Assembly: GCF_011386835.1 (NCBI RefSeq)
Contig: NC_088792.1
Coordinates: 287,246,463-287,310,000 of the forward strand
From: Chrysemys picta bellii
Lineage: Eukaryota
Direction of reading: 5' to 3'
Length of the DNA stretch: 63,538 bases
Program-made: the position numbers and the translations under genes
The notes under the pieces: generated by a model
What the model was told of the DNA's origin: nothing
What the model saw: only the letters and a program-made list of their open reading frames with translations
Database searches by the model: none
Shown here: piece by piece, positions 8,895 through 31,400 of the stretch
Layout: each line of letters begins with the position of its first letter
How positions within the stretch are numbered: the first letter of the stretch is position 1

Positions 8895-8949
8895 CCCCCA
8901 ACGCAAAATTGATGCAGGAAGGGATGTCACAAACACCACTGACTGCATC

Positions 8950-13542: not shown

Positions 13543-13648
13543 TGCAGCAGCTCTTTAACCAACAAAACTCTCAATCCCAAAATTCAAATTTGGACAGCGT
13601 GGGGTTCTGACCCAAAGCTTAATTGACCTGGTTCTGTGGATCCAAGCA

Positions 13649-13659
13649 CGACTACGCCA
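13649..13659 (-). other. Primer-binding site complementary to the tRNA-Ser 3' end
   Basis: The minus strand reads TGGCGTAGTCG one base after the 5' LTR. This matches 11 nt of the vertebrate tRNA-Ser(AGA/TGA) 3' end (...CGACUACGCCA), recalled from memory. Confidence 0.8.
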
Positions 13660-13660
13660 C

Positions 13661-14712: not shown

Positions 14713-16168
14713 CCTGTGCACTGAGCTTTGCAGAAGTTGATTTTATAGTTTACTCCCATCACAATTATTCCTCTGTGCCCCCCAGGACCCTCCCCGGTGT
14801 GCACCTGGCAAATTACAGGATGGGGTGCTAGAAACAGAGTGCTGCTAGTTGGTTCCTAGTCCCCTCCCTGACCAAGTGCCCACCCCTTTAGCCAGTGGCT
14901 CTCAAAGTGTGGGGTGCATCCCCCAGGGGAGCACAGAGGAATGTTTTGGGGGAGCACATGGCATGGCTGGAGCCAGCCTGCAGGGCAGGGCAGGGAGGGA
15001 GTGCCACACTTCCATCCCTGCTCTGTCCCCAGACCAGCTTTGCCCCTAACTGCAGCTCCACACCCCACCGCCTGCCCCAGCCCAGCTCTGTTCTCATTCC
15101 TGCTCTGCCCCCAGCCCAGCTCCGACCCCACCTCCCCCTTCAGCCCAAGCTTCACTGATGAGGAAGCCTGGGCTGTGCAGTAATGGGGGTGGGGAGGGGG
15201 GGCGTGGACAGATTAAATTTCTGGTAAGTGGGGGGAGCGACTGGAAAACTTTGAGCACCATTGACCTGACTGACACTCTCAGAACAGTGACCTGACTTTA
15301 GTCACAACTTTCTCATTATCTCAAAACCAGGACCCTACACTCAGCGTATCTGAACCTCCACCAGGGTCATGTTCCCCACTGATTTAAAGAGAAAAAGGGT
15401 TTCTATGGAGGAGGCTGAGCACTGACTTGGTCTATTTCCACAGTTAGACAAAATAGTGACTCAAAGACACTGACAGGCAGTCAACACACTGTTTATTTCC
15501 GCTCTATTTCAGTTGACATCCCAGAGGAGTCTATGATCTAAGGTAACAATGGAGAGGTAGGTTTGAAAACTCTAAAGACACGTAAAGAGGGGCTTTCGAG
15601 TCTAAAGAGGCAGAGAAGCCTCTCCAAGTACCTTTCAGGATCGTGGACCAGGTGTTGGGATCCCAGCCCCCTTCCTGACACCCTACTTCAGAACAGTGAC
15701 CGGGTTTTTGTCACAATTGTTCTTCTAATACCTCAGACTGGACCCTACAACCCACACCTCTGAACGCTCAGCAGGGTCCTGGTCCACCCCTTCACATGAA
15801 AGCGATCGCTATAAACAGGGAGGGGAACGGCCCTGGCAGAAACGAGGGGTGGGATCTCTCTCTACAGATTAAACATCAAATAGAGAATTAAAGGAACTAG
15901 AGCTCACCACGACACAAAAGTTTATACTTAAAATAAAATCCTTTAATTTGTAGTTCAGGAGAGGGATAAAATTGTACAAACCCCCAAACCCTAATACAAA
16001 GCATCGCACAGTCCCTGCTCCTCCAGGAAGACACTTAGAGCACAGAACAGCTCCTGGCAGCCCAGGAATGGGCTCCCAACATTCGCACCCAGACCAATGG
16101 CTGCGCTAGGTGGGCTGAGTGGAATCGATGGAACAGAGTCCCAGGGTTACTGGAGTCGGTGGCTGGTT

Positions 16169-16828
16169 TCAGGAATCTCTGGGGCTGGTCCCCTCGCTCT
16201 CTCCTCCTGTCTCCATCTTCTCGCTGCTCCCCGGCTCCTTTCCCTCCGTGGCCAGGTTTCCTTCTCCTGCCTTCACCCCCTGGCAGACGGTGATGGGAAC
16301 GGCTCTCCCTTCTGCAGCTGGCAGGGCCAGATGTGGCGCCTCGATGCAGAGCTGCCCATCCTGGGACAGGGAGCAGAGCACGGCCTCCACGTTCACGTCT
16401 TCCGGCAGGAGAGTTTCTCTGCGGATCTCTCTGTATTCGTGGGAGCAGACTCCAGCCTCCGACGCCGTTTTCTTCTCCTGCTTCCCCGTCACCGTCAGCT
16501 TCCTCCCGGCCACTCTCACCATCAGCTCAGCTGGGGAGAAGCCGCTCACGTCCATGGAGAGCTGGAACTTGTCCTTCCCCTGCACCTGGGATCCGGGCTC
16601 CTTCCCAGCCCCCTCCGCCAGGGACTGGCTGCTCGGCCTCGGCCTCCTCCCCTCACCCTCCCCGCAGAGAAGGGGAGAAGCCAGAAGGAGGGAGTGTCTC
16701 AGTCGCTCCATCTCCTCCAGGTGCGTCTGCACGTCCCCCACCAGCTGGGCCAAGAGGCTGTGGGGCCCCGGCCCCAGGAGCCTGGGCACTGGGGCGCTGC
16801 TGCCAAGCCACACTCGGAGCGGGAGCAT
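16169..16828 (-). CDS. HSP30: Small heat-shock protein, HSP30/HSPB9-like, copy A (219 aa, intronless)
   Basis: Alpha-crystallin domain (FQLSMDVSGFSPAELMVRV.GRKLTVTGKQE...LPEDVNVEAVLCSLSQDGQLCIEAP) followed by an LALPAAEGRAVPI C-terminal V-P-I motif. TATA and HSE lie upstream. Confidence 0.92.
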   Translation of the reverse strand: MLPLRVWLGSSAPVPRLLGPGPHSLLAQLVGDVQTHLEEMERLRHSLLLASPLLCGEGEGRRPRPSSQSLAEGAGKEPGSQVQGKDKFQLSMDVSGFSPAELMVRVAGRKLTVTGKQEKKTASEAGVCSHEYREIRRETLLPEDVNVEAVLCSLSQDGQLCIEAPHLALPAAEGRAVPITVCQGVKAGEGNLATEGKEPGSSEKMETGGESEGTSPRDS

Positions 16829-16953
16829 CCTGCCCCCCCGGGGCCTGGAGCCGCTGGGCCGAGTTCAGCTGCTGAGACGCTGCTGCTGGAGCCGCCTCTG
16901 CCTGACTCCCTGCCCGGCTGCTGCTCACTGGCTCCGGCAGCCCCCGCGCCGCC

Positions 16954-16998
16954 TTTTATAGCCTGCTCTGGCCGCGCCGGGCCCTTCGGGAACCTTCC
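16954..16998 (-). promoter_or_regulatory. Copy A promoter: TATAAAA (16954-16960) and perfect 3-unit HSE (16984-16998)
   Basis: The minus strand reads gGAAggTTCccGAAg about 24 bp upstream of TATAAAA, matching the nGAAnnTTCnnGAAn consensus. Confidence 0.88.
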
Positions 16999-18146
16999 CG
17001 CTGCTGGGGGCGGGGCCTGGCGCTGCTCGGGAGGGGCGGGGCTGCGGGCGGGGCCTGGCTCTGCTCGGGAGGGGCGGGGCTGCGGGCGGGGCCTGGCGCT
17101 GTCGGGAGGGGCGGGGCTGGGGCGGGGCCTGGCTCTGCTCGGCTGCGGGGGCCGAGCAGCTTCCAGCAGCCGCTGGCGGGCAGAGCTCCCGGATGGACTT
17201 TGCTGCATCCTTCCCGATCCCGCTGTGTTGGGGGGGTCGGGTCTCATGCCGGGGGTACGGGCTGGAGCGGGAGGGGGGGTTCAGGGCCGGGGGTACGGGC
17301 TGGAGCCGGGGAGACAGTCCCCGGGCGGGGGGGCGGGTTGGACAGTCCATGTGCGGAGCAGACACGGGAGACGGGCGAACACCCCCCACAGCGCACGTGT
17401 AATAAACAGTAACAGACACTCGTGTCCGGTCCGGGGGGGTCACACCCTGCAGCTGTCTCTGCCCCCCGCCCCCAGCGGCTCCTCCTAGGCTCTGTCCATT
17501 CACAAACACGAGGCAGGAGCTTCAGGGCACCTGAGAAACCCTCCAAGTTTGGCAGCCCCACAAACGGCAGATCGGGGGGGCACTTTATCCCAAATGTGAA
17601 TCTGGTTCCTCAAGGGCGGGGCGGAGTGGGAGCGGGAGGGAGGAGAAATATCCCGTTCGCGGGGGGCGAGGGGGAGGCTTCTGCTCGGCGCTGGTCCGGG
17701 AGCGGGGGTCTGTGCTACAGGGCTCGGAACCCCCCCCCCGCGCAGAGCCGGGCTCCAGCCTGTGCCCCGCCGCTGAACCCGCCCCCCCCCCCGCTCCAGC
17801 GCGTGCCCCCGGCATGAGACCCGACCCCCCCGCTCCAGCCCGTGCCCCCGGCATGAGACCCGACCCCCCACCCGCAACACAGCGGGATCGGGAAGGATCC
17901 AGCAAAGTCCATCCGGGAGCTCCGCCCGCCAGCGGCTGCTGGAAGCTGCTGGGCCCCCGCAGCCGAGCAGAGCCAGGCCCCGCCCCAGCCCCGCCCCTCC
18001 CGACAGCGCCAGGCCCCGCCCGCAGCCCCGCCCCTCCCGAGCAGAGCCAGGCCCCGCCCGCAGCCCCGCCCCTCCCGAGCAGCGCCAGGCCCCGCCCCCA
18101 GCCCCGCCCCTCCCGAGCAGCGCCAGGCCCCGCCCCCGCAGCAGCG

Positions 18147-18191
18147 GGAAGGTTCCCGAAGGGCCCGGCGCGGCCCCAGCAGGCTATAAAA
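18147..18191 (+). promoter_or_regulatory. Copy B promoter: perfect HSE (18147-18161) and TATAAAA (18185-18191)
   Basis: gGAAggTTCccGAAg ... gcTATAAAAgg, with many GGGCGG boxes upstream. Confidence 0.88.
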
Positions 18192-18316
18192 GGCGGCGCG
18201 GGGGCTGCCGGAGCCAGTGAGCAGCAGCCGGGCAGGGAGTCAGGCAGAGGCGGCTCCAGCAGCAGCGTCTCAGCAGCTGAACTCGGCCCAGCGGCTCCAG
18301 GCCCCGGGGGGGCAGG

Positions 18317-18967
18317 ATGCTCCCGCTCCGAGTGTGGCTTGGCAGCAGCGCCCCAGTGCCCAGGCTCCTGGGGCCGGGGCCCCACAGCCTCTTGGCCCAG
18401 CTGGTGGGGGACGTGCAGACGCACCTGGAGGAGATGGAGCGACTGAGACACTTCCTCCTTCTGGCTTCTCCCCTTCTCTGCGGGGAGGGCGAGGGGAGGA
18501 GGCCGAGGCCGAGCAGCTGGTCCCTGGCGGAGGGGGCTGGGAAGGAGCCCGGCTCCCAGGCGCAGGGGAAGGACAAGTTCCAGCTCTCCATGGACGTGAG
18601 CGGCTTCTCCCCAGCTGAGCTGATGGTGAGAGTGGACGGGAGGAAGCTGACGGTGACGGGGAAGCAGGAGAAGAAAACAGCGTCGGAGGCTGGAGTCTGC
18701 TCCCACGAATACAGGGAGATCCGCAGAGAAACTCTCCTGCCGGAAGACGTGAACGTGGAGGCCGTGCTCTGCTCCTTGTCCCAGGATGGGCAGCTCTGCA
18801 TCGAGGCGCCACATCTGGCCCTGCTAGCTGCAGAAGGGAGAGCCGTTCCCATCAGCGTCTGCCAGGGGGTGAAGGCAGGAGAAGGAAACCTGGCCACGGA
18901 GGGAAAGGAGCCGGGGAGCAGCGGGACAGGAGGAGAGAGCGAGGGGACCAGCCCCAGAGATTCCTGA
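18317..18967 (+). CDS. HSP30: Small heat-shock protein, HSP30/HSPB9-like, copy B (216 aa)
   Basis: Near-identical protein to copy A, divergently transcribed. Confidence 0.92.
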   Translation: MLPLRVWLGSSAPVPRLLGPGPHSLLAQLVGDVQTHLEEMERLRHFLLLASPLLCGEGEGRRPRPSSWSLAEGAGKEPGSQAQGKDKFQLSMDVSGFSPAELMVRVDGRKLTVTGKQEKKTASEAGVCSHEYREIRRETLLPEDVNVEAVLCSLSQDGQLCIEAPHLALLAAEGRAVPISVCQGVKAGEGNLATEGKEPGSSGTGGESEGTSPRDS

Positions 18968-19704
18968 AACCAGCCACCAACTCCAGTAACCCTGGGACTG
19001 TGTTCCATCGATTCCACTCAGCCCACCTAGCGAAGCAACTGGTCTGGGTGCGAATGTTCGGGAGCCCATTCCTGGGCTGCCAGGAGCTGTTCTGTGCTCT
19101 AAGTGTCTCCCTGGAGGAGCAGGGACTGTGCGATGCTTTGTATTAGGGTTTGGGGTTTTGTGCAATTTTATCCCTCTCCTGAATTACAAATTAAAGGATT
19201 TTATTTTAAGTACAAACTTGTGTCGTGGTGAGCTCTAGTTCCTTTAATTCTCTATTTGATGTTTAACCTGTAGAGAGAGACCCCACCCCTCGTTTCTGCC
19301 AGGGCTGTTCCCCTCCCTGTTTATAGCGATCGCTTTCATGTGAAGGGGCGGACCAGGACCCTGCTGAGAGTTCAGAGCTGTGGGTTGTAGGGTCCAGTCT
19401 GAAGTATTAGAAAATCAGTTGTGACAAAAGCCAGTCACTGTTCTGAAGGAGGCTGTCAGGAACTGAAGCGGGCTGGGAACCCAACACCTGGGCCACGATC
19501 CTGAAAGGTACTTGAAGGAATTTCTCTGCCCCTTTAGACTCTAAGGCCCCTCTTACACATCTTTAGCATTTTCAAACCTACCTCTTAGTTGTCACCTTAG
19601 ATCATAGACCCCTCTGGGATGTCAAATTAAATAGAGCTTCTTAGTGGAAATACACAGTGTGTTGACTGCCTGTCACTGTCTTTAAGTCACTATTTTATGT
19701 CTAA

Positions 19705-19989
19705 AGGTACATCTACACTACAGGGGGGAGTCGATTTAAGATACGCAAATTCAGCTACGTGAATAGCGTAGCTGAATTCGACGTATCCCGGCCGACTTAC
19801 CCCGCTGTGAGGACGGCGGCAAAATCTACCTTTGCGGCTTCCTGTCGATGGCGCTTTCTCCCACCTCCGCTGGTGGAGTAAGAGCGTCGATTCGGGGATC
19901 GATTGTCGCGTCCCAACGGGACGCGATTAATCGATCCCCGAGAGGTCGATTTCTACCCGCCGATTCAGGCGGGTAGTGTAGACCTAGCC
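19705..19989. mobile_element. Non-autonomous PIF/Harbinger-like MITE
   Basis: Imperfect 17-bp TIRs (aggtacatctacactac / gtagtgtagacctagcc) and a TAA TSD at 19702-19704 and 19990-19992. It is absent from the homologous left arm and contains internal palindromes. Confidence 0.8.
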
Positions 19990-20750
19990 TAACTCTGGAA
20001 ATAGACCAAGTCAATTCTCAGTCTCCTTCATAGAAACACTGTTTTGAAGAGAAAAGGGTATCTGAGCTGATTTCAAGGCAGTAACAGACTTTTTAGGGTC
20101 ACCACTTTGTTGCAGGTTTAGTATATTAAAATAAGTAAAAGAATGCAATGATTGTTTTCTCTTGCATTGCAATTTGATGTTCCTGTTCAAATGCTCTGTG
20201 TAAATCAGTTCTGTGTTGTGTGTGAATGAGGAATGTGTGTGTTAAGATCTAAGTGTGAAGGCCATCACCGTACCAGATGTTTTAGGGATGAACCGAAGAC
20301 AGACGCAAGACATGGCGGTTGCAACACGCCCCTATTGAAGTGTCAGAGGAGGGCAGACTGACGACTCTAAAGATGAGACAGGCACCTATCGATGAGGCCA
20401 AGATAGCTGTGATCAGAACCAGAATGGGGTAACTCCTGGAGAGACTTGATGAAAGAAGAGGATAAAGGATGAGAAAAACAATTTAAGAAAACAAGCACTC
20501 TTCAAACGACAATTGATTACAGCATGAGAGTGCAAAACTCATTGGTCCCAATGAAGGAAAATCACTATATATGTAGATAAATCTCTGTATTAAGCATCTT
20601 CACATAACTTTCATATGACTTTATATTATGCCTCTCCATATAACCTTGTATTAAGCTATTTTTATACAATTCTATCTCTAGTCCTTTGATATAGGAATTT
20701 TGTATCGGATCCCTAGGTAGAAAAACTTATAGAAAACTTTGTGTTAGGCC

Positions 20751-21850
20751 CAGGGTCGGCAACCTTTCAGAAGAGGTGCACCTAGTCTTCATTTATTCAC
20801 TCTAATTTAAGGTTTTGCGTGCCGGTAATACATGTTAACGTTTTTAGAAGGTCTCTTTCTATAATATGTAACTAAACTATTGTATGTAAAGTAAACAAGG
20901 TTTTCAAAATGTTTAAGAAGCGTCATTTAAAATTAAATTAAAATGCTGATCTTACACCAGCAGCCTGCTCAGCTCGCTGCCAGCCTGGGGTTCTGTTCAC
21001 CTAGGCCGGCAGCAGGCTGAGCAGGGCCTATGCCCGGGACCCCAGACCTGGGGGGAGGGGTTCAGGGCAGAGGGCTGGGGTGTGTGTGGGGGATCAGGGT
21101 ACAGGGCTGGGGTGTGTAGGGCTGGGTGTGTGGGGGGTTCAAGGGTCAGGTCAGAGGGCTGTGGGGGGTGCAGGGCAGAAGGCCGGGTGTGTGTTGGGGT
21201 GTGGGGGTTCAGGGCATAGGGCTGGGAGTGTGGGAGGGGTGCAGGGCAGAAGGCTGGGGTGTGTGGGGGTGTTCTGGGATCAGGGTAGAGGGCTGGGGTT
21301 TGTAGGGCAGAGGGCTGGGTGCGGGGGGGGGGTTCAAGGGTCAGGTCAGAGGGCTGTGGCGGATGCAGGGCAGAAGGCTGGGTGTGTGTGGGGGGGTCAG
21401 GGCAGAGGGATGGGGCTGTGGGGGTGCAGGGCAGAAGGCAGGAGTGTGCGGGGGGTTCAAACGTCAGAGGGCTGGGGTGCTCGGCAGGGGGCTGGAAGGG
21501 ATATGTCCTGTTCCACCCCCTTCCCCCAGGCTCTGTCCCTACCTCTCTCTGCGTCCTCTACGGAGCTGTGTGCACGCTGCCGCTCTTCCCCCTCCCCCTC
21601 GCTAGGGCCATCAACTGATTGGTGCAGGGATGGAGAGGGGGAGGGGAAGGAAAGCACCACGCTGTGGGAAGAAGCGGGGGAGGGGGGAAGCTTGGCTGCT
21701 GCAGAACCAAGCTTCTGCATCCTGCCCCTGCAGCGGAGAGTGGTGAGCGGGGTGGGGGGCTGAGTGGGGCTGGGGGCCGGGACCGCGGCAGGGAGCTGCG
21801 TGCCACTCAGAATCGGCTCCCATGCTGTGTTTGGCACGCGTGCCGTATGT
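20751..21850. mobile_element. Probable hAT-like non-autonomous DNA element with a G/T-rich tandem-repeat interior
   Basis: Begins 'cagggtcggcaacct' and ends 'gttgccaacccctg', an inverted-terminal resemblance typical of reptile hAT MITEs. The interior has degenerate 'ggggtgcagggcagaaggctg' repeats. Confidence 0.55.
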
Positions 21851-24800
21851 TGCCAACCCCTGTGTTAGGCCTTGGTATAATGTTATAGCCCCTAAGGATA
21901 GTTAAAGTAGAAGAAAAATGTCTTTTTGCTCGGAGTAGAATAAGAACTCTCTCCCCTGCCCCCCCGCCACTCCCTTAATCAATTGCCCTGTTGAATAAGT
22001 GAGGTGTGAATGAGCAAGGCATGGAAGGCAAGCACCACCAGACAGCTGCAACAGTTGGAGAGGGGATGGAAGCCAGACCCAAAAACAATAAAACTTGTCA
22101 AGTGGGCTCACTGAAGAAGAGCAGATATACTGAGGGCCTTGTGGGTTAGAAGCAAGCACCTTCTTTTGCAAACACCCTCTTTGAACAGCACTGGGACAAC
22201 ACCCAGAAAAAAAGCAGTACAAAGGACCAACAGACACAGATACAGATCTTGAATCTGGTATAGATTTGCATGAGAGGGAAGCTGCTATAAATGTGAGGTG
22301 TCTTGCAGAGGCCCCCTGGTCTCGTCTTGTCAACATGAGAGCATCGATCCGGATCGGCAGAAGCCCAGCTCCATCCCTTCCCCATCTAACTCACCTGGCC
22401 AGTGAAGTTAAGGTAACAACAAGACGGAGCATGCTTGTGTGTGAGTGTAATACAACATATGCATATGATACAGTGTGGATTTGGTACATGTATTACCAAT
22501 AAATGTGGCGCTTTGCCTTATTCCCCTGAAAAGATCCTGTGCAGTACTTTGAGTACAACATATAAACAGGGTGCCTTGCCATGAAACTGCGGGTTCATCC
22601 TCCCAAGACTTCCCTAGATTTAGTCCATAGGTTATAATCCAAATGTTTATATTCAGGGTGGTCCAGTTAGGACTGGGATATCAGTCTTACGGCTTAAGCT
22701 TCCCCTGCATGAAGCAGATCTGAGCTAAAAAGAATCAGGTCCCAAAAGCCTTTTATACAATTTCCAGGCTCTCTTTGACAGTTCGGAGACCTTTGGCAAA
22801 CAACAGGTACTTATGGAAGCTTATTTCCTAAGCATCACCGGTAGTTAGTTACACAAATTAACATAAGGCAATTTATTCATTAGGCAGTCTATCACAAACT
22901 TCAAAGAGACATATCAACAATAATATTGTTGCATTCAAGATTCACCTAAATCAGGGGTGGGCAAACTTTTTGGCCTGAGGGCCACATCAGGGTTTGGACA
23001 TTGTATGGTGTCAATGAATGCTCATGAAATTGGGGTTGGGGTGTGTGGGAGGGGGTGTGTTAGTCTGTATCAGCAAAAACAACGAGTCCTCCTTGTGGCA
23101 CCTTAGAGACTAACAAATTTATTTGGGCATAAGCTTTCGTGGGCTAGAACCCACTTGGATCATATGCAGTTCTCCTTCTAAGGTACCTCAAAGTCCAAGC
23201 CACTTTCCCAGTGGCTGGGGGGGTGTGTGTGTGACCGAGGTCCACCCTCTACTTTGGGTCCCAGTGCAGGGACCCTATAGATAGCAGCCATCCGCCATGT
23301 CCCTTTAAATAAACTGAGTTGCTGCTCTAATTAGCTGGGCCACCTCTCCGTGGCTCTCACACATTCTTCACCCTTATCTCAGGGCCTTGTCCTTGTGGAG
23401 TCCCCACACCCAGCCTGGAGCAACAGCCACTCTCCTCCAGCTCTAGCAAGGAACTGAACTTGCTCTCGCCCTGCAGCGCTTCTTATATTGACCTGCTGGG
23501 CCCCGACTGGATGCTGCTCACACAGCCGCTCCAGGCAGCTTGGAGGACCTCTCTACTGCTCTTTTTCTGGGGCGGGTTGTGGCAGGACCACAAGGCCTCC
23601 AGCAGGGGTCCTCAAAGCGTAGTCCACCCCATCAGAACCTCCAAAAGGAGAGAGACTTTTAATAGGATTTGATTACCTTGTTTCCTACAGTTACTCAGTT
23701 TGAGTTTTGCTTTCTAGTCCTTACTTGTGTTTTCATCAGTAAACTTCCAACTTTGTAATGAGTGCGTTTGGGTGTGTGCCAAGAAGCCAGGGTCGCTGTA
23801 GAAAGCCAGCGGCTCTACACACCCACCCATCCCTGAACCTTTTTATCACAGTTTCACTGTCGGACAGTGAAGGAGTTTATAACACCTTTAACTCTTTGGG
23901 GCCCTGCTATGAATACAATAGGACCAACACCATGCATCGCGTGGGGACAGGTAGGTGCCGAAGGAAGGCCTTGTCTGCAGCCAGGCAGTTGAAACTGTCA
24001 ACCAGATAGGCAGGGACGGAACAGGGGTTTAGGTGTCTGAGCAGCTGACTTGGTACCCCGGGCTGGCTGATGGGCCAGAGATCAGTGCCTCACTCCACTC
24101 CGGAGCCACAGCCTCAAACCCTCTCCCGGAGTCAGACACCTATGCCAAGTTAGCCGCCTAGGTAGCCCATGTCCTACTAGCCAAACCCACATCTCTCTCT
24201 GTGTCGCACGATTCCTGGCTCACCCTATTTTCCCATGGCCCCAGCTGTCCTTTGTGGGATGCTCTGCTGTTCCTCTGCCTAGTGGGGACCAGTCTCTGGC
24301 TCGTCTCCCGTGAGGGCTGGCAGGTACGAGGTGTTCGGCATGGTGGAGCGGCCCTACAGGATTGAACTGACTAGTTTGAGAATTCTGCTTCCGCGGCCTC
24401 TGGAGCTTCAGCCTTCGAGCAGCTCTGTAGCTGGGGAGGGCTTCAGCACCGAGCCAGCTTTGCAAATGCTGCTTGGAGGAAAGATTGGCCCCTATAGGCA
24501 CCATCACCCTGCGGGACGACGGCACCTGTATCCCCCTGCGTGGTCCAGCAAGGGTTTTTGGCACCCAGCCATCACGTCTCCTTGGCAGAGACCCCGCATC
24601 TCTCTCCCTCCTGACGGGTGACGTTCCAGGCTACACAGTTCCCTCCCGCAGCCCACCCTGACCCAAACGGCCTGCATCTGCGCTTTGCTTCCTCTTCAGA
24701 GACGGAACGCTCAGTGATTAGTTACTATCCAGCTCTTTCTGTGCAAGCACAGTCATTGTTACGGGGAAGCATTACAGAGAAAGCACATTACCAGCAATAC

Positions 24801-25506
24801 AAGAACCCACAAGTGAGGCAGGGTGACTATGCTACAAAGCTTGAAGTCAGCCCAGCTCCAGCCAAGGACTCTGCCAACTGTCAATCCTTCTAGCCCTTCC
24901 TTAAGGCTTGCCCTCCCCACTCTGAGAACTATAGTACAGACAGTCCCTGGGCCACAGAGATATGTAAACTTCGTACAATCAAAGCTCCTAAGGGTACTGC
25001 AGGGTATTACCATATATGTCAGAACCGTCTACAGGGTTACGTGCCTCTGGGCCTGGTATTTGATTCCTAGTCCCCTCTCTAATCAGGCACTCCCCCCACT
25101 TCCCCTCAATACGTCAACCCGGCCCTTTATCACAGCTGCTCTGCTCTTATCTTAGATCTGCACCCAACAATCAACAGCTCTGAACCCTCAAAACCATCAT
25201 GTTCCCTCACTTGCAGAGAGATGAGAACTGACCTGGGACAAAGGCAGTTTATTTCCAAAGGTGAAACATGAAATAGCAAATCAAGCAGACAGAGCTCACC
25301 AGACAGCACAGTTTGTCTTTACTAGAAAGGTTGATATTGAATTTTAAAAATTCAAGACAAGTATAAACATTCTATCAAAATGCATAAAAAGAGCCAAGAA
25401 AGGGAGCATCCCCCAGTCACTTCTCTTCCAGAGAGATTCTGACAGCCCAGGAATATGCTCAGGACCGTTCACACCAAGATTTGGTTACTGGAGTCGGTGG
25501 CTGGTT

Positions 25507-26163
25507 TCAGGAATCTCTGGGGCTGGTCCCCTCGCTCTCTCCTCCTGTCTCCATCTCGCTGCTCCCCGGCTCCTTTCCCTCCCTGGCCAGGTTTCCTTCT
25601 CCTGCCTTCACCCCCTGGCAGACGCTGATGGGAACGGCTCTCCCTTCTGCAGCTGGCAGGGCCAGATGTGGCGCCTCGATGCAGAGCTGCCCATCCTGGG
25701 ACAGGGAGCAGAGCACGGCCTCCACGTTCACGTCTTCCGGCAGGAGAGTTTCTCTGCGGATCTCCCTGTATTCGTGGGAGCAGACTCCAGCCTCCGACGC
25801 CGTTTTCTTCTCCTGCTTCCCCGTCACCGTCAGCTTCCTCCCGTCCACTCTCACCATCAGCTCAGCTGGGGAGAAGCCGCTCACATCCATGGAGAGCTGG
25901 AACTTGTCCTTCCCCTGTGCCTGGGAGCCGGGCTCCTTCCCAGCCCCCTCCGCCAGGGACCGGCTGCTCGGCCTCGGCCTCCTCCCCTCACCCTCCCCGC
26001 AGAGAAGGGGAGAAGCCAGAAGGAGGGAGTGTCTCAGTCGCTCCATCTCCTCCAGGTGCGTCTGCACGTCCCCCACCAGCTGGGCCAAGAGGCTGTGGGG
26101 CCCCAGCCCCAGGAGCCTGGGCACTGGGGCGCTGCTGCCAAGCCACACTCGGAGCGGGAGCAT
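25507..26163 (-). CDS. HSP30: Small heat-shock protein, HSP30/HSPB9-like, copy C (218 aa from the ATG at 26163)
   Basis: Same protein. The first true ATG is at 26163; the listed start at 26361 is a GTG in the presumed leader. Confidence 0.92.
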   Translation of the reverse strand: MLPLRVWLGSSAPVPRLLGLGPHSLLAQLVGDVQTHLEEMERLRHSLLLASPLLCGEGEGRRPRPSSRSLAEGAGKEPGSQAQGKDKFQLSMDVSGFSPAELMVRVDGRKLTVTGKQEKKTASEAGVCSHEYREIRRETLLPEDVNVEAVLCSLSQDGQLCIEAPHLALPAAEGRAVPISVCQGVKAGEGNLAREGKEPGSSEMETGGESEGTSPRDS

Positions 26164-26207
26164 CCTGCCCGGGTCCTGGAGCTGCTGCACCGAGTTCAGC
26201 TGCTGAG

Positions 26208-26220
26208 ACGACGACGACGA

Positions 26221-26315
<95 letters not shown>
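26208..26315 (-). repeat. (CAG)31 plus (CGT)5 trinucleotide tract in the 5' leader of copy C
   Basis: The plus strand has (ACG)5 at 26208-26222 and (CTG)31 at 26223-26315. The other three copies carry only about 3 CAG units here. Confidence 0.95.
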
Positions 26316-26317
<2 letters not shown>

Positions 26318-26386
26318 GATGGAGCTACCGCTGCCTGACTCCCTGCCCAGCTGCTGCTCACTGGCTCCGGCAGCCCCCGCGCCGCC

Positions 26387-26431
26387 TTTTATAGCCTGCT
26401 CGGGCCGCGCCGGGCCCGTCGGGAACCTTCC
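26387..26431 (-). promoter_or_regulatory. Copy C promoter: TATAAAA (26387-26393) and HSE with a mutated third pentamer (26417-26431)
   Basis: The minus strand reads gGAAggTTCccGACg: GAA is changed to GAC in the TATA-proximal unit. Confidence 0.85.
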
Positions 26432-26649
26432 CGCTGCTGGGGGGCGGGGCCTGGCGCTGCTGTTGAAGGGCTCTGCTCGGGAGGGGCGGGGCTGGGGGCG
26501 GGGCCTGGCTCTGCTCGGGAGGGGCGGGGTCTTGCTTGCTCGGCTGGAGGGGCCCAGCAAGTTCCAGCAGCTGCTGGCGGGCGGAGCTCCCGGGCCGGGC
26601 TTTGCTGGATCCTTCCCGATCCCGCTGTGTTTGAGGGGGCGGGGTCACG

Positions 26650-26862
26650 CCGGGGGTACGGGCTGGAGCGGGGGGGGGGGGTCAGAGCCGGGGGTACGGG
26701 CTGGAGCGGGGGGGGGGTTCAGGGCCGGGGGTACGGGCTGGAGCCGGGGGGGGTTCAGGCCGGGGGTACGGGCTGGAGCCGGGGGGGGGGCGTTCAGGCC
26801 GGGGGTACGGGCTGGAGCCGGGGGGGGGGTTCAGGGCCGGGGGTACGGGCTGGAGCCGGGGA
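26650..26862 (+). repeat. ~37-bp G-rich minisatellite, 6 copies (ccgggggtacgggctggagc+Gn)
   Basis: Units start at about 26650, 26688, 26725, 26760, 26799 and 26837. The homologous A/B spacer has only 2 units (about 17249 and 17287). Confidence 0.9.
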
Positions 26863-27609
26863 GACAGTCCCCGGGCGGGGTCTGGGCGGGGGGCGGGTTG
26901 GACAGTCCATGTGCGGAGCCGACACGGGAGACGGGCGAACACCCCCCACAGCGCACGTGTAATAAACAGTAACAGAGACTCGTGTCCGGTCCGGGGGGGT
27001 CACACCCTGCAGCTGTCTCTGCCCCCCGCCCCCAGCGGCTCCTCCGAGGCTCTGTCCATTCACTAACACGAGGCAGGAGCTTCAGGGCACCTGAGAAACC
27101 CTCCAAGTTTGGCAGCCCCACAAACGGCAGATCCCGACCCCTGCTGGGGGCAGGGGCTGGAGGGGGGGGGCACTTTATCCCAACTGTGACTCTGGTTCCT
27201 CAAGGGCGGGGCTCTAACGGGGGGGGGGGAATATCCCGTTCGCGGGGGGGGGGGGGGGAGGGGTTCTGCCCGGCGCTGGTCCGGGAGCGGGGGTCTGTGC
27301 TACCGGGCTCGGAACCCCCCGGGCAGAGCCGGGCTCCAGCCTGTGCCCCGCCGCTGAACCCGCCCCCCCCCCGCTCCAGCGCGTGCCCCCGGCATGAGAC
27401 CCGCTCCCCCCCCCCAACACAGCGGGATCGGGAAGGATCCAGCAAAGCCCGGCCCGGGAGCTCCGCCCCCTAGCGGCTGCTGGAAGCTGCTGGGCCCCCC
27501 CAGCCCCGCCCCTCCCGAGCAGCGCCAGGCCCCGCCCCCAGCCCCGCCCCTCCCGAGCAGCGCCAGCCCCCGCCCCCCGAGCAGCGCCAGGCCCCGCCCC
27601 CCAGCGGCG

Positions 27610-27654
27610 GGAAGGTTCCCGAAGCGCCCGGCGCGGCCCGAGCAGGCTATAAAA
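27610..27654 (+). promoter_or_regulatory. Copy D promoter: perfect HSE (27610-27624) and TATAAAA (27648-27654)
   Basis: gGAAggTTCccGAAg ... gcTATAAAAgg. Confidence 0.88.
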
Positions 27655-27779
27655 GGCGGCGCGGGGGCTGCCGCAGCCAGTGAGCAGCAGCCGGGCAGGG
27701 AGTCAGGCAGAGGCGGCTCCAGCAGCAGCGTCTCAGCAGCTGAACTCGGCCCAGCGGCTCCAGGCCCCGGGGGGGCAGG

Positions 27780-28436
27780 ATGCTCCCGCTCCGAGTGTGG
27801 CTTGGCAGCAGCGCCCCAGTGCCCAGGCTCCTGGGGCCGGGGCCCCACAGCCTCTTGGCCCAGCTGGTGGGGGACGTGCAGACGCACCTGGAGGAGATGG
27901 AGCGACTGAGACACTCCCTCCTTCTGGCTTCTCCCCTTCTCTGCGGGGAGGGTGAGGGGAGGAGGCCGAGGCCGAGCAGCCGGTCCCTGGCTGAGGGGGC
28001 TGGGAAGGAGCCCGGCTCCCAGGCGCAGGGGAAGGACAAGTTCCAGCTCTCCATGGACGTGAGCGGCTTCTCCCCAGCTGAGCTGATGGTGAGAGTGGAC
28101 GGGAGGAAGCTGACGGTGACGGGGAAGCAGGAGAAGAAAACGGCGTCGGAGGCTGGAGTCTGCTCCCACGAATACAGGGAGATCCGCAGAGAAACTCTCC
28201 TGCCGGAAGACGTGAACGTGGAGGCCGTGCTCTGCTCCCTGTCCCAGGATGGGCAGCTCTGCATCGAGGCGCCACATCTGGCCCTGCCAGCTGCAGAAGG
28301 GAGAGCCATTCCCATCACCGTCTGCCAGGGGGTGAAGGCAGGAGAAGGAAACCTGGCCAGGGAGGGAAAGGAACCGGGGAGCAGCGAGATGGAGACAGGA
28401 GGAGAGAGCGAGGGGACCAGCCCCAGAGATTCCTGA
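27780..28436 (+). CDS. HSP30: Small heat-shock protein, HSP30/HSPB9-like, copy D (218 aa)
   Basis: Same protein, divergent from copy C. Confidence 0.92.
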   Translation: MLPLRVWLGSSAPVPRLLGPGPHSLLAQLVGDVQTHLEEMERLRHSLLLASPLLCGEGEGRRPRPSSRSLAEGAGKEPGSQAQGKDKFQLSMDVSGFSPAELMVRVDGRKLTVTGKQEKKTASEAGVCSHEYREIRRETLLPEDVNVEAVLCSLSQDGQLCIEAPHLALPAAEGRAIPITVCQGVKAGEGNLAREGKEPGSSEMETGGESEGTSPRDS

Positions 28437-31400
28437 AACCAGCAACAAAGTTGAACAACTATGGGACTTCTCTGCATTGCGTCCACACAGCGTAGCTTGC
28501 GTAGCAGCTGATATTGATTTGAATGCTCCTGTGCCCCTTCCGGGCCTTTCAGAGTTTACTCCAGCTGTGCTGGAACAGTTTGTATAGTGGGGGTATTAAG
28601 AGCCATTGAATCAAACTGTAACCCCTTTACGCCAGGAGGTGAAGCCGCGTCCCTAGTTCCAGCACGTCTGATTTACTCCATGTGATTCACCCTGTGAGAA
28701 GTGACTGATACACCTTTCCTGGTTGCTCAGTGTTGGTGTCTGATGTACATAACATTACTGGTCGTGATTGTGAAAAATATTAATTTCGTAACTGTCAATA
28801 GCAGCTGGTTTGCTGGATGCTGTTTGTGTCTGTGTAACTGCTGCCAATAAACCCACCTCTTCGGCCTTTTCTCATCACCCTTTTCAGTCCACCTTCCAAA
28901 CTGAACAGTGTGGGCTTGGGTGGGGGTGGGAGAGTCAGGGACCTGTTTGATGTTGCACACGACTGAGGATAGGTCCATTTCATAGCTCACTGGAGCAGGT
29001 GCAACAGCTGCTAGCGCAGGCTCTCCCAGCACAGGGTGTTACTTAACGGAATAGTTGGTGAGAGAGGGTTTGATAGGCAAACAGGAGTTACTGTCCCGCA
29101 TCCTTCTTCAGCTGCCCGCTCCACTGGAGGGCTCAGCGTCCTGGAAAGTAAAGGGAAATAACTACATGAAGCGAAGCAGGAGACCTACTGCTACGGTAGG
29201 AGCTTAAGCAATAGGCTCAGTGAATGGGAGAGAGCAGGGAGGATGGTTAGAAATTGGGGCTTCCTCACTCTTCCCCCCCCGTGCAACTTACCTACCCCAT
29301 CCTGCTGCCCTGAGGCCACGTGCATCCAGAGGGCAGCATGAGGGAAGGAAGGGGTGGAATTTTTTCGGCTGTCCCAGTATAACTCCAGCTGGTAGTGGCT
29401 GGAAAAGAATGGTCCCTTACCCTACAGCAACGGTGGCTCTTTGAGATGGTGTGGGCATTGCGGATCCCACTGTGAGGGGGGGGGGGTGGCGCATGAGCCC
29501 GATGTACATCAGCCAGGAGTGTTTCTCAATAGCTGTTGTGCTGAACTGAGAAACGTCTCATTCATTTTCATGAATGAAGAGGCGTGACTCAGTTTCCCTT
29601 TTTTGTCGTGTGTTACCTGCTGGGTCAGAAAGGGTTAACTTTTTTCTTGAAAGGAGACAAAGCAATGCAGTGATTTGCAGGGGGTGGGTGGGATGGATGA
29701 ACCAGCAGGAAGTAACAGCACTAGAGAGGACTTACTGCAGATGGCTAGATGGGTCACCAAGCCAGCGGGGGCAGGGAATTGTATATGCTGGTTTGGACAG
29801 GGTTCAAGAGGCCCAGCAGATTAAGTTTGGAGAAGTGTATAAAGTGGGCAACCTATGATAGCAGGGTTTGTGGGGGGAGGTGCCATTCTCACTTGGTCCA
29901 AACACTGACACACATAAGCCAAGGGGTCAGATCCTGCTGGAAGGTTGAGGGACGGACCCCTGCTGAAGATGGATGACATGCTAATACAGGCAGGCGTAGA
30001 GGCTGTTTAGTGTTTTATTAGCTGTTTTCTCTTCATGTTTTTGTTCTGAATAAATCCTTTCCTTTATGAAGCCTGGCTAGACAACGGATCACCCAGTCAT
30101 AGCACCAGGCAGAGACAGGACAGCAAGTGCTAAGCCTCACTAAGTTGATCACAGTGAGTCCCAAGAGAAAATTACAGCCTAAAGCCCTGGTGTCGAGGGA
30201 GAGGCGTGTGATTTCCCACCCAGAAAAAGGTGATGGCTACAGGCCTGAGATCTGAGCAGGGGGCCTTCAAGGAAGCTATGAAAGGATCAGGGGTGCAGTT
30301 AACCCTGGAACTGTGATCGGGACTTTTGTGTCCCCCTGGGCCAGAGGGCCCCTCCCCACCCTTTCTGCCTGCAGTCCTCCTTGTCCCCAGTCCTGCTGGG
30401 GAGCGGGGTCGGGGGCTTCCCCGATCCCTGACAGGAGCACTGGGCGGGCAGAGCGGGACAGCCCCAGCACCCCTGACCCTGCTCCCCAACAGGAGCGCCA
30501 GGTAGGTGGGTGGAGCAGGTCGGGGCACGTCCATTTTTCCAGGACCCCCCCAATTGGCTGGGGCCCCCCAATTGTCCTGTTGTCCAAGTGGCTAATCCAC
30601 CACTGAGGTGATAGCGATGTCCATCCAGGCCACACATGCCCCCGTGCCTCCTCATGCTCCCACAAGAGGGCATAACGGGCAGGGCGGCCAGACCTCCCTC
30701 AGTTCCCTCACAATTCAAAGCCCATGTTGCCAAGGTCTCCAAATGGAGGCCGGGTTGGGGGATCCCCATGGACTACAACATCCCGGAGAACCACAGTTGC
30801 TGTGGGGCGAGTAGCAGTTCCCTGTTGCCGTATGTGTCCGTGTGGCTTCTGATCGAGGCGACCGGAAAGTAGCATCCTCACTGGATGGTGGGCGGGAGGC
30901 GTTTCAGCTGTCAGTCAAACAGGGATCGAAGTACTGCTCTCCCGGACCGTGCTGCTCTCCTGCCCTTGGCATCTGACCTGGCTACCACGTCTACAGCATA
31001 ACGTTGAACAACAGGCAGTGAAGTGCTCCACAGTGCAGCTAGCAGAGACTCGCACCTACCTGATGCAGGCAAGAGATGCTGCTGCTGGAGCGCACCTTGT
31101 CACTCAGAGGGGGAGGCTTGGCAGCTATCTGATAGCAGGGGAAATGCCCCATGAGATCGACTTAGAGAGGCTCAGTGATGAGATGGCTTGGCCAGAAATG
31201 GCCACAAAGAGGCAGGGAGACAGCCTGAAGAAGGGCGTGGTGAAGTTAAGGAAACAGAGCAAACTCTGGCCATGTTCAAAGTACATAGCTTCTTTTCTCC
31301 TAGCGTTGAATGCTGCTTCAAGATTGGCAGGCAGGGTAATTGCTCAGTTGACGGGGGGAGCTCGGTGGTTTGAGCATGGGCCTGCTAAACCCAGGTTTGT

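What the first reader, a model, noticed from the sequence alone, without database searches (positions are those of the whole stretch)
15399..28445. Four HSP30 genes as two head-to-head pairs with sharply bounded sequence homogenisation
Seen: the cassette from one stop codon to the other (about 16144-18980 versus 25482-28445), including the bidirectional spacer, is nearly identical between the pairs. Similarity drops to a faint trace about 10-25 bp past the stops of C and D. Established: inverted-pair hsp70 genes in Drosophila evolve by gene conversion, and Xenopus has an hsp30 cluster. Inference: old duplicates kept uniform by ongoing conversion limited to CDS and promoter, with copy-specific 3' UTRs. 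I am not aware of a description of this architecture for amniote HSP30/HSPB9-like genes.
Basis: partly seen in the sequence, partly recalled or inferred. Interest (0 to 1): 0.72.

Follow-up and report, generated by a model that had tools for sequence, protein, structure and literature searches.

The report
Turtle HSP30 gene pairs evolving in concert
Four small heat-shock (HSP30) genes of an emydid turtle sit in two head-to-head pairs, and their coding and promoter DNA has been copied between positions for over 100 million years while the DNA just past each stop codon kept its own identity; this is a clean new case of a well-known process, gene conversion.

Summary
The window carries four intronless HSP20-domain genes: A 16169-16828(-), B 18317-18967(+), C 25507-26163(-) and D 27780-28436(+). 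The stop-to-stop cassettes 16145-18974 and 25483-28443 are 96% identical, and the coding sequences 98-99%.

Against A/B, identity collapses 24 nt past the stop of C and 7 nt past the stop of D. The "faint trace" beyond is real old homology: 64-72% identity, z 9-35.

- Three 3' flank types are shared across species. The C type and the D type (next to NAPRT) reach Chelonia; type 1 (A/B) also reaches Emydura.
- The coding sequences instead group by species or lineage. AU tests reject positional clades (p 2e-6 to 2e-44).
- Synonymous sites are homogenised too: dS 0.006-0.03 within species against 0.14-0.17 between positional orthologues.

Three corrections apply.
- A and B do not have copy-specific flanks. 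Pair 1 is a palindrome (15444-19704) with flank arms 91-93% alike.
- "Ongoing" conversion is not shown. The last sweep is about as old as the split from Chrysemys and Malaclemys.
- Flank partners differ among species, so crossovers inside the cassettes also occur.

Scan note s1-312479 reports a related HSP30 palindrome cluster 165 kb upstream in the same genome. This is a known kind of process in a new family and lineage.

The parts
15444..16168 (-). 3' flank of gene A, 'type 1'; left arm of the pair-1 palindrome outside the gene
   Evidence: Inverted match 15444-17142 vs 19704-18000, 94%. Flank-only identity to the B flank is 91-93%. Orthologous type-1 flanks occur in Chrysemys, Emys, Chelonia and Emydura.
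16145..18974 (.). Homogenised stop-to-stop cassette 1 (A, spacer, B)
   Evidence: 96.0% identical to 25483-28443 over 2660 aligned columns.
16169..16828 (-). HSP30 gene A, 219 aa, intronless
   Evidence: ORF. Pfam HSP20 E 1.2e-16.
16829..18316 (.). Bidirectional spacer 1, 74% G+C, 131 CpG. It holds the A promoter (HSE 16985-16997, TATA 16955-16960), the B promoter (HSE 18148-18160, TATA 18185-18190) and 38-nt GC-box repeats at 17003-17142 and 17963-18135.
   Evidence: Motif scans. TRF.
18317..18967 (+). HSP30 gene B, 216 aa, with a 9-nt deletion near the C-terminus
   Evidence: ORF. Pfam HSP20 E 3e-16. C-terminal comparison.
18968..19704 (+). 3' flank of gene B, 'type 1' inverted; right arm of the palindrome outside the gene
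   Evidence: In the flank tree it groups with Chrysemys B-type arms, apart from the A-type arms.
22436..25482 (-). Copy-specific 3' flank of gene C ('C type')
   Evidence: Collinear with the flank of C-position copies in Malaclemys (94.7-95.6%), Chrysemys (97.6%), Emys (94.8%), Gopherus (83-90%) and Chelonia (80-86%).
25483..28443 (.). Homogenised stop-to-stop cassette 2 (C, spacer, D)
   Evidence: Independent contigs branch at 25483 and 28443.
25507..26163 (-). HSP30 gene C, 218 aa from the conserved ATG. The ORF stays open upstream through the repeat to 26361.
26222..26315 (-). (CAG)31 on the gene strand, in the 5' leader of C, followed by (CGT)5
   Evidence: TRF period 3, 31.3 copies, 100% matches. 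Leader alignment. The leader is longer than in non-C copies in Malaclemys and Chrysemys C-position copies too.
26164..27779 (.). Bidirectional spacer 2, 74% G+C. It holds the C promoter (HSE 26418-26430 with the third unit GAC instead of GAA, TATA 26388-26393), the D promoter (HSE 27611-27623, TATA 27648-27653) and 38-nt repeats at 26635-26861.
   Evidence: The HSE change is shared with the Chrysemys L011 C-position copy.
27780..28436 (+). HSP30 gene D, 218 aa
   Evidence: ORF. Pfam HSP20 E 5.6e-17. 98% identical to Malaclemys HSP30C-like.
28444..31186 (+). Copy-specific 3' flank of gene D ('D type'), running on into NAPRT
   Evidence: Collinear with Malaclemys (94%), Emys L012 (92.6-95%) and Chelonia L007 (82-92%). 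In Emys and Chelonia it continues into the called NAPRTase gene.

Best explanation
The locus holds four heat-inducible, intronless small heat-shock protein genes of the vertebrate HSP30 family. They lie in two divergent pairs. Each gene has its own HSE-TATA core promoter at the edge of a shared 1.5-1.6 kb GC-rich spacer.

The gene positions are old: their 3' flanks are positional orthologues across cryptodiran turtles, and one flank type also reaches a pleurodire. The stop-to-stop cassette (CDS, promoter, spacer) has been overwritten repeatedly by non-allelic gene conversion. This happens both between inverted partners and between the two directly repeated pairs. As a result the copies of one species resemble each other more than they resemble their positional orthologues.

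Tracts stop where usable homology stops. That is 7 nt past the stop at D, in every species examined. At C it was about +85 to +95 ancestrally, and is +24 in deirochelyines because of a shared 49-nt deletion.

The same cassettes also serve as substrates for crossovers. These have re-partnered flanks, built palindromes (pair 1 here), made tandem duplicates and left truncated copies in different lineages.

Conversion is episodic. In the window's lineage the last complete homogenisation is roughly as old as the split from Chrysemys and Malaclemys.

Shown: the anatomy, flank orthology, species-wise CDS clustering, synonymous homogenisation and the boundaries. Inferred: conversion as the molecular process, homology-limited tract ends, NAHR as the cause of the rearrangements, and heat inducibility from the HSE.
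For: Family and promoters:
- Pfam HSP20 in all four genes.
- Best hits are turtle 'HSP30C-like' proteins.
- A three-unit HSE lies at -169 and TATAAA at -132 in A, B and D and in other emydid copies; Emydura keeps the HSE at about -161 to -164.

Flank orthology:
- The D-type flank runs into NAPRT in the window, Emys and Chelonia.
- The C-type flank is shared by six species.
- The type-1 flank is shared down to Emydura.

CDS by species:
- Chelonia copies are 98.9-99.7% alike but about 89% to emydid copies. Emys copies are 97.9% alike against 95.4-96.8% to the others.
- In the 29-CDS tree Carettochelys, Emydura and Chelonia each form a clade at 100/100, the deirochelyines at 100/94 and Emys at 87/54.
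- AU tests reject the D, C and type-1 positional clades (p 2e-6, 2e-44, 3e-5).

Synonymous sites: dS is 0.025-0.032 within the window and 0.006-0.017 within Chelonia. Between positional orthologues of the two it is 0.14-0.17.

CDS against flank:
- Flank K is 0.35-0.48 between flank types, against CDS K of 0.015-0.02.
- The same contrast holds inside the palindrome: A-B CDS K 0.020 against flank K 0.075. The flank arms group by position with Chrysemys arms.

Boundaries:
- Identity drops within 25 nt of the stop in the window, Emys, Chelonia and Malaclemys.
- The 3' UTR alignment shows that type-1 and C-type copies of Chelonia share species-specific changes up to about +95, while D-type copies differ from +8 in all species.

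Composition: GC3 is 80% against 40-50% G+C in the flanks, as expected under long-term biased conversion.

Rearrangements differ by species:
- Window: type1.type1 and C.D.
- Emys and Chelonia: truncated type-1 copy paired with D, and a separate pair holding C.
- Gopherus: C fragment paired with a type-1-flanked gene.
- Chrysemys L003: C-position pseudogene paired with a type-1-flanked gene; L011: intact C-position gene paired with one.
- Malaclemys: the C-D unit is duplicated in tandem and B is absent.
- Emydura: the pair is duplicated in tandem.
Against: - No individual conversion tract is resolved in the window. Differences among the four copies are nearly all singletons (2 informative sites), and a simple longest-run test was weak.
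- Within deirochelyines the CDS tree is unresolved, and some position-specific states persist across species: the C-copy HSE change and CAG leader, and nt 460 in B-position copies. Recent conversion in this lineage is therefore not demonstrated.
- Type-1 flanks exist in several paralogous copies in Chrysemys, spread over three loci in about 300 kb. The same genome as the window reportedly has another cluster 165 kb upstream. Orthology of type-1 positions is thus less secure than for C and D, and unseen copies may be donors.
- The long-range order of such repeats depends on the correctness of each assembly.
Confidence: 0.85

Rival explanations
1. Homogenisation comes mainly from repeated crossovers rather than from short-tract gene conversion. 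On this view, cycles of unequal exchange, duplication and deletion, together with inversions between copies, replace whole gene copies.
For: Copy number and arrangement differ among species. Tandem duplicates that include their flanks exist in Malaclemys (C-D unit, flanks 100% alike for 300+ nt) and Emydura. Truncated copies occur in Emys, Chelonia and Gopherus. Flank partners have been swapped.
Against: Crossovers move flanks together with genes. Yet the C-type and D-type flanks stay in place while the genes between them become species-specific. Inverted partners cannot be homogenised by unequal exchange. An inversion crossover only swaps segments and does not make the copies alike. The break at +7 of D is the same in all species.
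Confidence: 0.2
2. Birth and death without conversion. Each lineage recently re-duplicated one HSP30 gene, so within-species similarity reflects young duplicates rather than homogenised old ones.
For: Lineage-specific duplications do occur (Malaclemys, Emydura, the Chrysemys loci). Within deirochelyines the copies are about equally similar within and between species.
Against: Young duplicates would carry young flanks. Instead three flank types, each 18-25% diverged between Chelonia and the window, are attached to genes that are 99% alike within each species. A duplication would have to end within 7-24 nt of both stop codons and land in the old positions, which amounts to conversion. The flanks of different types are still alignable at 64-72%, which shows that the original duplication included them.
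Confidence: 0.06
3. Purifying selection on protein and promoter alone keeps the copies alike.
For: The genes are intact and the HSE and TATA are conserved.
Against: Synonymous sites are as homogenised as replacement sites (dS 0.006-0.03 within species against 0.14-0.17 between). The protein is not strongly constrained between lineages (dN/dS 0.6-0.9). Paralogues share species-specific substitutions. The non-coding, non-palindromic spacer centre 17293-17573 is 98-99% alike between pairs but is not conserved in Chelonia.
Confidence: 0.01
4. Assembly artefact: mis-assembled or falsely duplicated repeats create the apparent pairs and sharp boundaries.
For: The region is repeat-rich and 70-74% G+C. 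Short-read contigs break inside it. The many Chrysemys loci could partly be false duplications.
Against: The C-flank to gene junction is covered without differences by contigs from three runs of two coded organisms. Contigs also span the gene-D to flank junction, and the graphs branch exactly at 25483 and 28443. The C.D-NAPRT layout recurs in Malaclemys, and head-to-head pairs recur in seven turtle assemblies. The four copies differ by private substitutions and indels.
Confidence: 0.03

Closest known systems
Drosophila melanogaster hsp70 genes at 87A (divergent pair) and 87C, concerted evolution by gene conversion
   Same: These are heat-shock genes in an inverted pair plus further copies. The coding and 5' regions are homogenised within a species while the flanks diverge, and the copies group by species rather than by position.
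   Different: A different protein family (Hsp70, not an alpha-crystallin sHSP). Here two pairs share a whole 1.5 kb spacer as one directly repeated cassette. The tract ends sit 7-24 nt past the stop, and the D-side end is unchanged between lineages that I recall as separated for about 100 My or more.
Caenorhabditis elegans hsp-16 loci: divergent sHSP gene pairs with a shared HSE region, one pair duplicated as a 1.9-kb inverted module (Russnak and Candido 1985; from memory)
   Same: The genes are alpha-crystallin-domain sHSPs arranged head to head around a bidirectional heat-shock promoter. The pair module is duplicated, with identity that ends abruptly. Conversion against recent duplication was discussed for that locus.
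   Different: The nematode genes have an intron, the spacer is a few hundred bp, and the module copies are inverted rather than direct. No cross-species flank-versus-CDS test of the kind run here is known to me.
Mammalian HSPA1A/HSPA1B, gene conversion confined to the coding region with raised GC3 (Kudla et al. 2004; from memory)
   Same: The conversion tract coincides with the CDS, the UTRs and flanks are copy-specific, and the converted part has high GC3 (80% here).
   Different: There are two genes, not divergent pairs, and the promoter is not part of one shared homogenised spacer.
Xenopus laevis hsp30 gene family (Bienz 1984; Krone et al. 1992; from memory) and bird HSP25/HSP30C-like
   Same: They belong to the same protein family by best hits (frog HSP30C-like 38-46% identical). 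They are intronless, HSE-driven, clustered and multi-copy.
   Different: I could not establish a head-to-head, stop-to-stop homogenised layout for frogs. The one gecko locus fetched has two genes in tandem, not head to head. No paper in the searchable library describes the turtle arrangement.
Arm-to-arm gene conversion in large palindromes, such as primate sex-chromosome palindromes (Rozen et al. 2003; from memory)
   Same: Pair 1 is a palindrome of about 4.3 kb whose arms are kept alike.
   Different: Only the inner part of the arms (gene and promoter, 98-100%) is homogenised. The outer 730 nt are 91-93% alike and group by position across species.

Membership tests
HSP20 / alpha-crystallin small heat-shock proteins (Pfam PF00011) | Alpha-crystallin domain scoring above the Pfam gathering threshold | tested here: met
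   All four ORFs score 59.8-62.2 bits against a cut-off of 20.8, covering profile positions 3/4 to 101/102 of 102.
Vertebrate HSP30 (HSP30C-like) subfamily | Closest named relatives are HSP30 proteins of reptiles and amphibians | tested here: met
   51 hits. Turtle HSP30C-like proteins are 76-98% identical, gecko, snake and frog HSP30C-like 38-46%.
Vertebrate HSP30 (HSP30C-like) subfamily | Intronless gene with a heat-shock element and a TATA box upstream | tested here: met
   Uninterrupted ORFs of 216-219 aa. A three-unit HSE lies at -169 and TATAAA at -132 in A, B and D. In C the third HSE unit is changed.
Vertebrate HSP30 (HSP30C-like) subfamily | Heat-inducible transcription | not testable with these tools
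   Only assembled contigs were available. One RNA-library contig carries a C-type (CAG)n(CGT)n leader joined to the CDS, but DNA carry-over cannot be excluded.
Concerted evolution by non-allelic gene conversion | Paralogues within a species are more alike than positional orthologues between species | tested here: met
   Identity matrix. Trees with species clades, and AU rejection of positional clades.
Concerted evolution by non-allelic gene conversion | Independent evidence that the positions predate the species split (orthologous flanks) | tested here: met
   The C-type and D-type flanks are collinear over 1.7-3 kb from the window to Chelonia, and the D flank runs into NAPRT. The type-1 flank reaches Emydura. 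Type-1 orthology is weaker because Chrysemys has several paralogous copies.
Concerted evolution by non-allelic gene conversion | Homogenisation includes synonymous and non-coding sites, so it is not due to selection | tested here: met
   dS values. The spacer centre is 98-99% alike between pairs.
Concerted evolution by non-allelic gene conversion | Discrete tracts detectable statistically (GENECONV-type test) | tested here: inconclusive
   A home-made longest-run permutation test gave p 0.0002 for A-D and B-D and 0.009 for A-C. The other pairs gave p 0.017 to 0.73. Singletons interrupt the runs, and GENECONV itself was not available.
Concerted evolution by non-allelic gene conversion | Conversion still active in the present lineage | tested here: inconclusive
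   Paralogue dS is about equal to orthologue dS to Chrysemys and Malaclemys. Position-specific states are retained across species. The EK-codon indel sits at different positions in Emys and the window, which suggests exchange after their split.

The most novel reading that the evidence does not exclude
The HSP30 stop-to-stop cassette may be a very long-lived, self-homogenising module, dating to crown turtles (about 200 My from memory). Its conversion limits would be effectively frozen, +7 at the NAPRT-side copy in every lineage. Its recombination activity would also drive the local genome architecture: repeated palindrome formation with whichever flank lies next to the partner (type 1 here, C-type in Chelonia), re-partnering of flanks by inversion, and seeding of the 100-kb-scale duplications seen in Chrysemys and reported upstream in this genome. 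Biased conversion would push GC3 to 80%. That would make the locus a natural system for measuring how conversion-tract boundaries persist over deep time.
Probability: 0.4. Interest if true: 0.55.

Novelty: new member of a known kind. Interest (0 to 1): 0.38.

Why it matters
Concerted evolution of heat-shock genes is a textbook process, so the mechanism is not new. What this locus adds is an unusually clean vertebrate case.

- The test is decisive because three distinguishable flank types mark the positions.
- The converted unit is a whole bidirectional cassette.
- The 3' limits can be followed base by base across species. From memory, these span about 100-200 My of turtle evolution.

It also has practical consequences.
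- Turtle HSP30C-like genes cannot be treated as one-to-one orthologues in expression or selection studies.
- Only the 3' UTRs of C and D are copy-specific tags.
- Short-read assemblies will collapse or mis-join this region.
- HSP30 transcripts are reported as temperature-responsive in a turtle sex-determination study (PMC11025153). Knowing which copies carry an intact HSE therefore has some practical value.

Tried and rejected
- **Longest-run test.** A Sawyer-type permutation test on the four window copies was uneven: p was 0.0002 to 0.009 for A-D, B-D and A-C, and 0.017 to 0.73 for the other pairs. Almost every difference is a singleton that breaks the runs. I relied instead on CDS-versus-flank contrasts and cross-species trees.
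- **EK codon as a positional marker.** I first read the extra AGA (EK) codon near the 3' end as a positional marker of type-1 copies. More loci showed it at a D-position copy in Emys and a C-position copy in Chrysemys, so it is not a positional marker.
- **L002 as the orthologue of pair 1.** I first took Chrysemys L002 for the orthologue of pair 1. Later loci showed that Chrysemys has three HSP30 loci and that L011 is the best counterpart of window B to C. Type-1 orthology is therefore stated cautiously.
- **Selected element in the D 3' UTR.** I looked for one that could explain the +7 limit. Conservation against Chelonia is a flat 80-88%, with no peak.
- **Rfam.** Nothing was found in 14000-30000.
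- **Literature.** Four full-text searches found no description of a turtle or amniote HSP30 cluster architecture. PMC5101479 on chicken HSP25 holds nothing on synteny or duplication.
- **Expression.** The runs were available only as contigs, so level, strand and transcript ends could not be read.
- **RNA-mediated copying.** Rejected, because the promoter and spacer are homogenised and most of the 3' UTR is not.

Full report
**What is there**

Window 14-30 kb holds exactly four ORFs related to small heat-shock proteins (tblastn):
- A: 16169-16828(-), 219 aa.
- B: 18317-18967(+), 216 aa.
- C: 25507-26163(-), 218 aa from the conserved ATG.
- D: 27780-28436(+), 218 aa.

All four are uninterrupted and carry a full Pfam HSP20 domain (E 6e-17 to 3e-16). 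The nearest database proteins are 'heat shock protein 30C-like' of emydid turtles: Malaclemys 97-98% and Chrysemys 94-96%. Other turtles follow at 76-82%, and geckos, snakes and frogs at 38-46%. The window therefore comes from an emydid (deirochelyine-like) turtle.

A/B and C/D are head-to-head pairs around spacers of 1488 and 1616 nt (74% G+C, about 130 CpG each). Each gene has a three-unit heat-shock element 169 nt and a TATAAA 132 nt before its ATG. Arrays of 38-nt GC-box repeats lie further in. Copy C differs: its third HSE unit reads GAC instead of GAA, and its leader holds (CAG)31(CGT)5. Rfam finds nothing in the region.

**Check of the observation**

The global alignment gives 96.0% identity over 2660 columns plus 471 gap columns from repeat-number differences. 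Coding sequences and proximal promoters are 98-100% alike, and parts of the spacer centre 83-93%.

In 50-nt windows identity falls from 98-100% to 15-60% directly after the stop in every comparison between A/B, C and D. The four flanks start with the same 7 nt. A and C share 24 nt.

The contrast is far beyond chance:

| Pair | CDS K | Flank K |
|---|---|---|
| A-C | 0.015 | 0.39 |
| A-D | 0.014 | 0.48 |

Fisher p ranges from 1e-20 to 1e-40 across the four A/B-versus-C/D pairs.

The 'faint trace' is real homology. A/B vs C is 70-72% over about 310 nt (z 26-35), and A/B vs D is 64-67% over 90 nt (z 9-13), against shuffled controls.

Contigs of independent public runs (two coded organisms) cover the C flank into the gene without a difference. 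They branch exactly at 25483 and 28443, with loose ends that read the A/B-type continuation. The boundaries are therefore not an artefact of this assembly.

The finding's text does not state that A and B share their 3' flanks. The ranges 15444-17142 and 19704-18000 are an inverted repeat of 94%, and its flank part is 91-93% alike over about 730 nt. Pair 1 is a 4.3-kb palindrome. Pair 2 is palindromic only from the stops to a few hundred nt upstream of the ATGs.

**Test of conversion against recent duplication**

I fetched the DNA around HSP30 genes of eight other species and typed the 3' flank of every copy against the window. Three flank types recur.

- **D type.** It is collinear for 1.7-3 kb or more in Malaclemys, Emys (L012) and Chelonia. 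In Emys and Chelonia it leads into the called NAPRTase gene, as it does in the window (28444 to about 37400).
- **C type.** It is collinear in Malaclemys, Chrysemys, Emys, Gopherus and Chelonia (80-98%).
- **Type 1 (A/B).** It is found in Chrysemys, Emys, Gopherus and Chelonia. It also occurs next to the minus-strand genes of the pleurodire Emydura, at 78-80%.

The positions therefore predate the split of emydids from sea turtles, and for type 1 the split of the two turtle suborders. From memory these splits are roughly 100 and 200 My old.

The coding sequences tell the opposite story.
- The three Chelonia copies are 98.9-99.7% alike but about 89% to any emydid copy.
- Emys copies at C-type and D-type flanks are 97.9% alike, against 95.4-96.8% to deirochelyine copies.
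- In a maximum-likelihood tree of 29 coding sequences, Carettochelys, Emydura and Chelonia each form a clade (100/100). All 16 deirochelyine copies form one clade (100/94). The four Emys copies, from three flank types, group together (87/54).
- AU tests reject trees that hold the D-position, C-position or type-1 copies together (p 2e-6, 2e-44, 3e-5).

Selection cannot explain the pattern. dS is 0.025-0.032 among the window copies and 0.006-0.017 among Chelonia copies, but 0.14-0.17 between positional orthologues of the two. dN/dS between lineages is 0.6-0.9.

The flanks of different types are still alignable, with K of 0.35-0.48. That is about twice the orthologous flank divergence between the window and Chelonia (K 0.21-0.25). 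The original duplication therefore included the flanks and is older than that split.

**Where the tracts end**

An alignment of the first 230 nt after the stop in 16 copies shows the following.
- D-type copies depart from all others at +8 in every species, Chelonia included.
- C-type copies of Emys, Gopherus and Chelonia follow the type-1 sequence to about +85 to +95.
- Within Chelonia, the C-type and type-1 copies share species-specific changes over that stretch. Concerted evolution therefore reached into the proximal 3' UTR there.
- The C copies of the window, Malaclemys and Chrysemys share a 49-nt deletion (+25 to +73). That deletion is why the break in the window lies at +24.

The same abrupt fall within 25 nt of the stop is seen between unlike flank types in Emys, Chelonia and Malaclemys. 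I infer that tracts end where homology is already lost, and that these limits are stable over very long times. I found no conservation peak in the D 3' UTR that would point to selection for a copy-specific element.

Even inside the palindrome the homogenised zone is limited. A-B divergence is K 0.020 in the CDS and 0.075 in the flank. The flank arms group by position with Chrysemys arms: the A-type arm at 100/99 and the B-type arm at 77/92.

G+C is 66% in the CDS, with GC3 at 80%, and 74% in the spacers, against 40-50% in the flanks. This fits long-term GC-biased conversion but does not prove it.

**Is it ongoing?**

Not demonstrably in this lineage.
- Among the four window copies almost all differences are private: A 5, B 7, C 3, D 3, with 2 informative sites.
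- Paralogue dS equals orthologue dS to Chrysemys and Malaclemys (0.025-0.038).
- Inside the deirochelyine clade the tree is unresolved.
- Some states follow position across species. The HSE GAA>GAC change is shared by window C and the Chrysemys L011 C-position copy. The C-position leader is lengthened in all three species. Nt 460 is T in window B and Chr_3, a Chrysemys copy with a B-type flank.
- In the other direction, an extra AGA codon near the 3' end sits in type-1 copies here, in the D-position copy of Emys and in a C-position copy of Chrysemys. This points to exchange after those lineages split.

The picture is of episodic sweeps, the last complete one near the base of the deirochelyines.

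**Crossovers as well as conversion**

Which flank types are partnered differs by species.

| Species (locus) | Arrangement |
|---|---|
| Window | type1.type1 and C.D |
| Emys, Chelonia | A truncated type-1 copy paired with D next to NAPRT. A separate pair holds C, with a partner whose flank is D-type (an inverted duplicate) in Emys and C-type (a palindrome) in Chelonia |
| Gopherus | C fragment paired with a type-1-flanked gene |
| Chrysemys L003 | C-position pseudogene (frameshift) paired with a type-1-flanked gene |
| Chrysemys L011 | Intact C-position gene paired with a type-1-flanked gene |
| Chrysemys L002 | A palindrome with type-1 arms over 6 kb |
| Malaclemys | B absent, and the C-D unit with flanks present twice in tandem |
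| Emydura | The pair duplicated in tandem |

The flanks stay attached to gene 3' ends, so the breakpoints lie inside the cassettes. The window layout can be derived from the Emys/Chelonia layout by one inversion between inverted copies followed by arm duplication and deletion. That derivation is an inference, and it depends on the assemblies being right.

Chrysemys has at least three HSP30 loci within about 300 kb. Scan note s1-312479 reports another HSP30 palindrome cluster 165 kb upstream in the window's own genome. I could not read that cluster, so donors outside the window are possible.

**Comparison with what is known**

The process is the classical concerted evolution of heat-shock genes. 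The closest cases, all cited from memory, are:
- Drosophila hsp70.
- The divergent hsp-16 pairs of C. elegans, with their sharply bounded duplicated module.
- CDS-limited, GC-raising conversion of mammalian HSPA1A/B.

By family the genes are HSP30. The one gecko locus fetched has two genes in tandem rather than head to head.

Full-text searches found no description of this architecture in turtles or other amniotes. HSP30C appears only as a temperature- or heat-responsive transcript in Mauremys and chicken.

**Expression**

Only assembled contigs were available. One RNA-library contig joins a (CAG)n(CGT)n leader of the C type to the coding sequence, and others cover CDS parts. This is compatible with transcription, but DNA carry-over is not excluded.

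**Verdict**

It needs correcting on the A/B flanks and on 'ongoing', and it needs the crossover-driven rearrangements added.
- It is a new, well-resolved member of a known kind of system.

Noticed in passing
window 26164-26431: Copy C has (CAG)31(CGT)5 in its 5' leader, with the ORF staying open through it. The third HSE unit is GAC instead of GAA. The HSE change is shared with the Chrysemys L011 C-position copy. The leader is also lengthened in Malaclemys and Chrysemys C-position copies, so both are old position-specific traits. In Chrysemys L003 the C-position copy is frameshifted, and in Gopherus it is a fragment.
   Followed up: partly
window 7843-14712: This stretch is absent from the otherwise collinear type-1 flanks of Chrysemys, Emys and Chelonia. 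It is therefore an insertion in the window's lineage, and it contains the retrotransposon noted by the scan at 8950-13542.
   Followed up: partly
window 21053-21479: A G-rich minisatellite with units of about 32 and 61 nt (5-9 copies, 64-89% matches) lies between the two gene pairs.
   Followed up: no
window 22558-23985: About 1.4 kb is present in the window and in Chrysemys L011 but absent from the paralogous Chrysemys L003 copy of the same interval. This is an indel between large duplicated segments.
   Followed up: no
window ~31500-37400: This stretch is collinear with the called NAPRTase gene of Emys (L012) and Chelonia (L007). NAPRT is the conserved right-hand neighbour of the HSP30 cluster.
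   Followed up: partly
L002, L003, L011 (Chrysemys CM062319.1, 286.90-287.22 Mb): Chrysemys carries at least eight intact HSP30 genes plus a pseudogene in three loci spread over about 300 kb. Copies of the window's left flank longer than 6-10 kb occur there in both orientations. These are either large segmental duplications or partly false duplications in that assembly.
   Followed up: partly
L001/L004 (Malaclemys CM051159.1, 4.10-4.13 Mb): The A-position gene is followed by the spacer and then directly by sequence matching window 20771 onward. Gene B and its flank are therefore missing. A CAP-Gly plus UCH (CYLD-like) gene lies beyond gene A.
   Followed up: no
window 17293-17573 vs 26888-27133: The non-palindromic centre of the spacer is 98-99% alike between the two pairs. 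It is only 87-92% alike to Malaclemys, Chrysemys and Emys, and it was not found in Chelonia. It seems to be carried along with the cassette rather than conserved for itself.
   Followed up: partly
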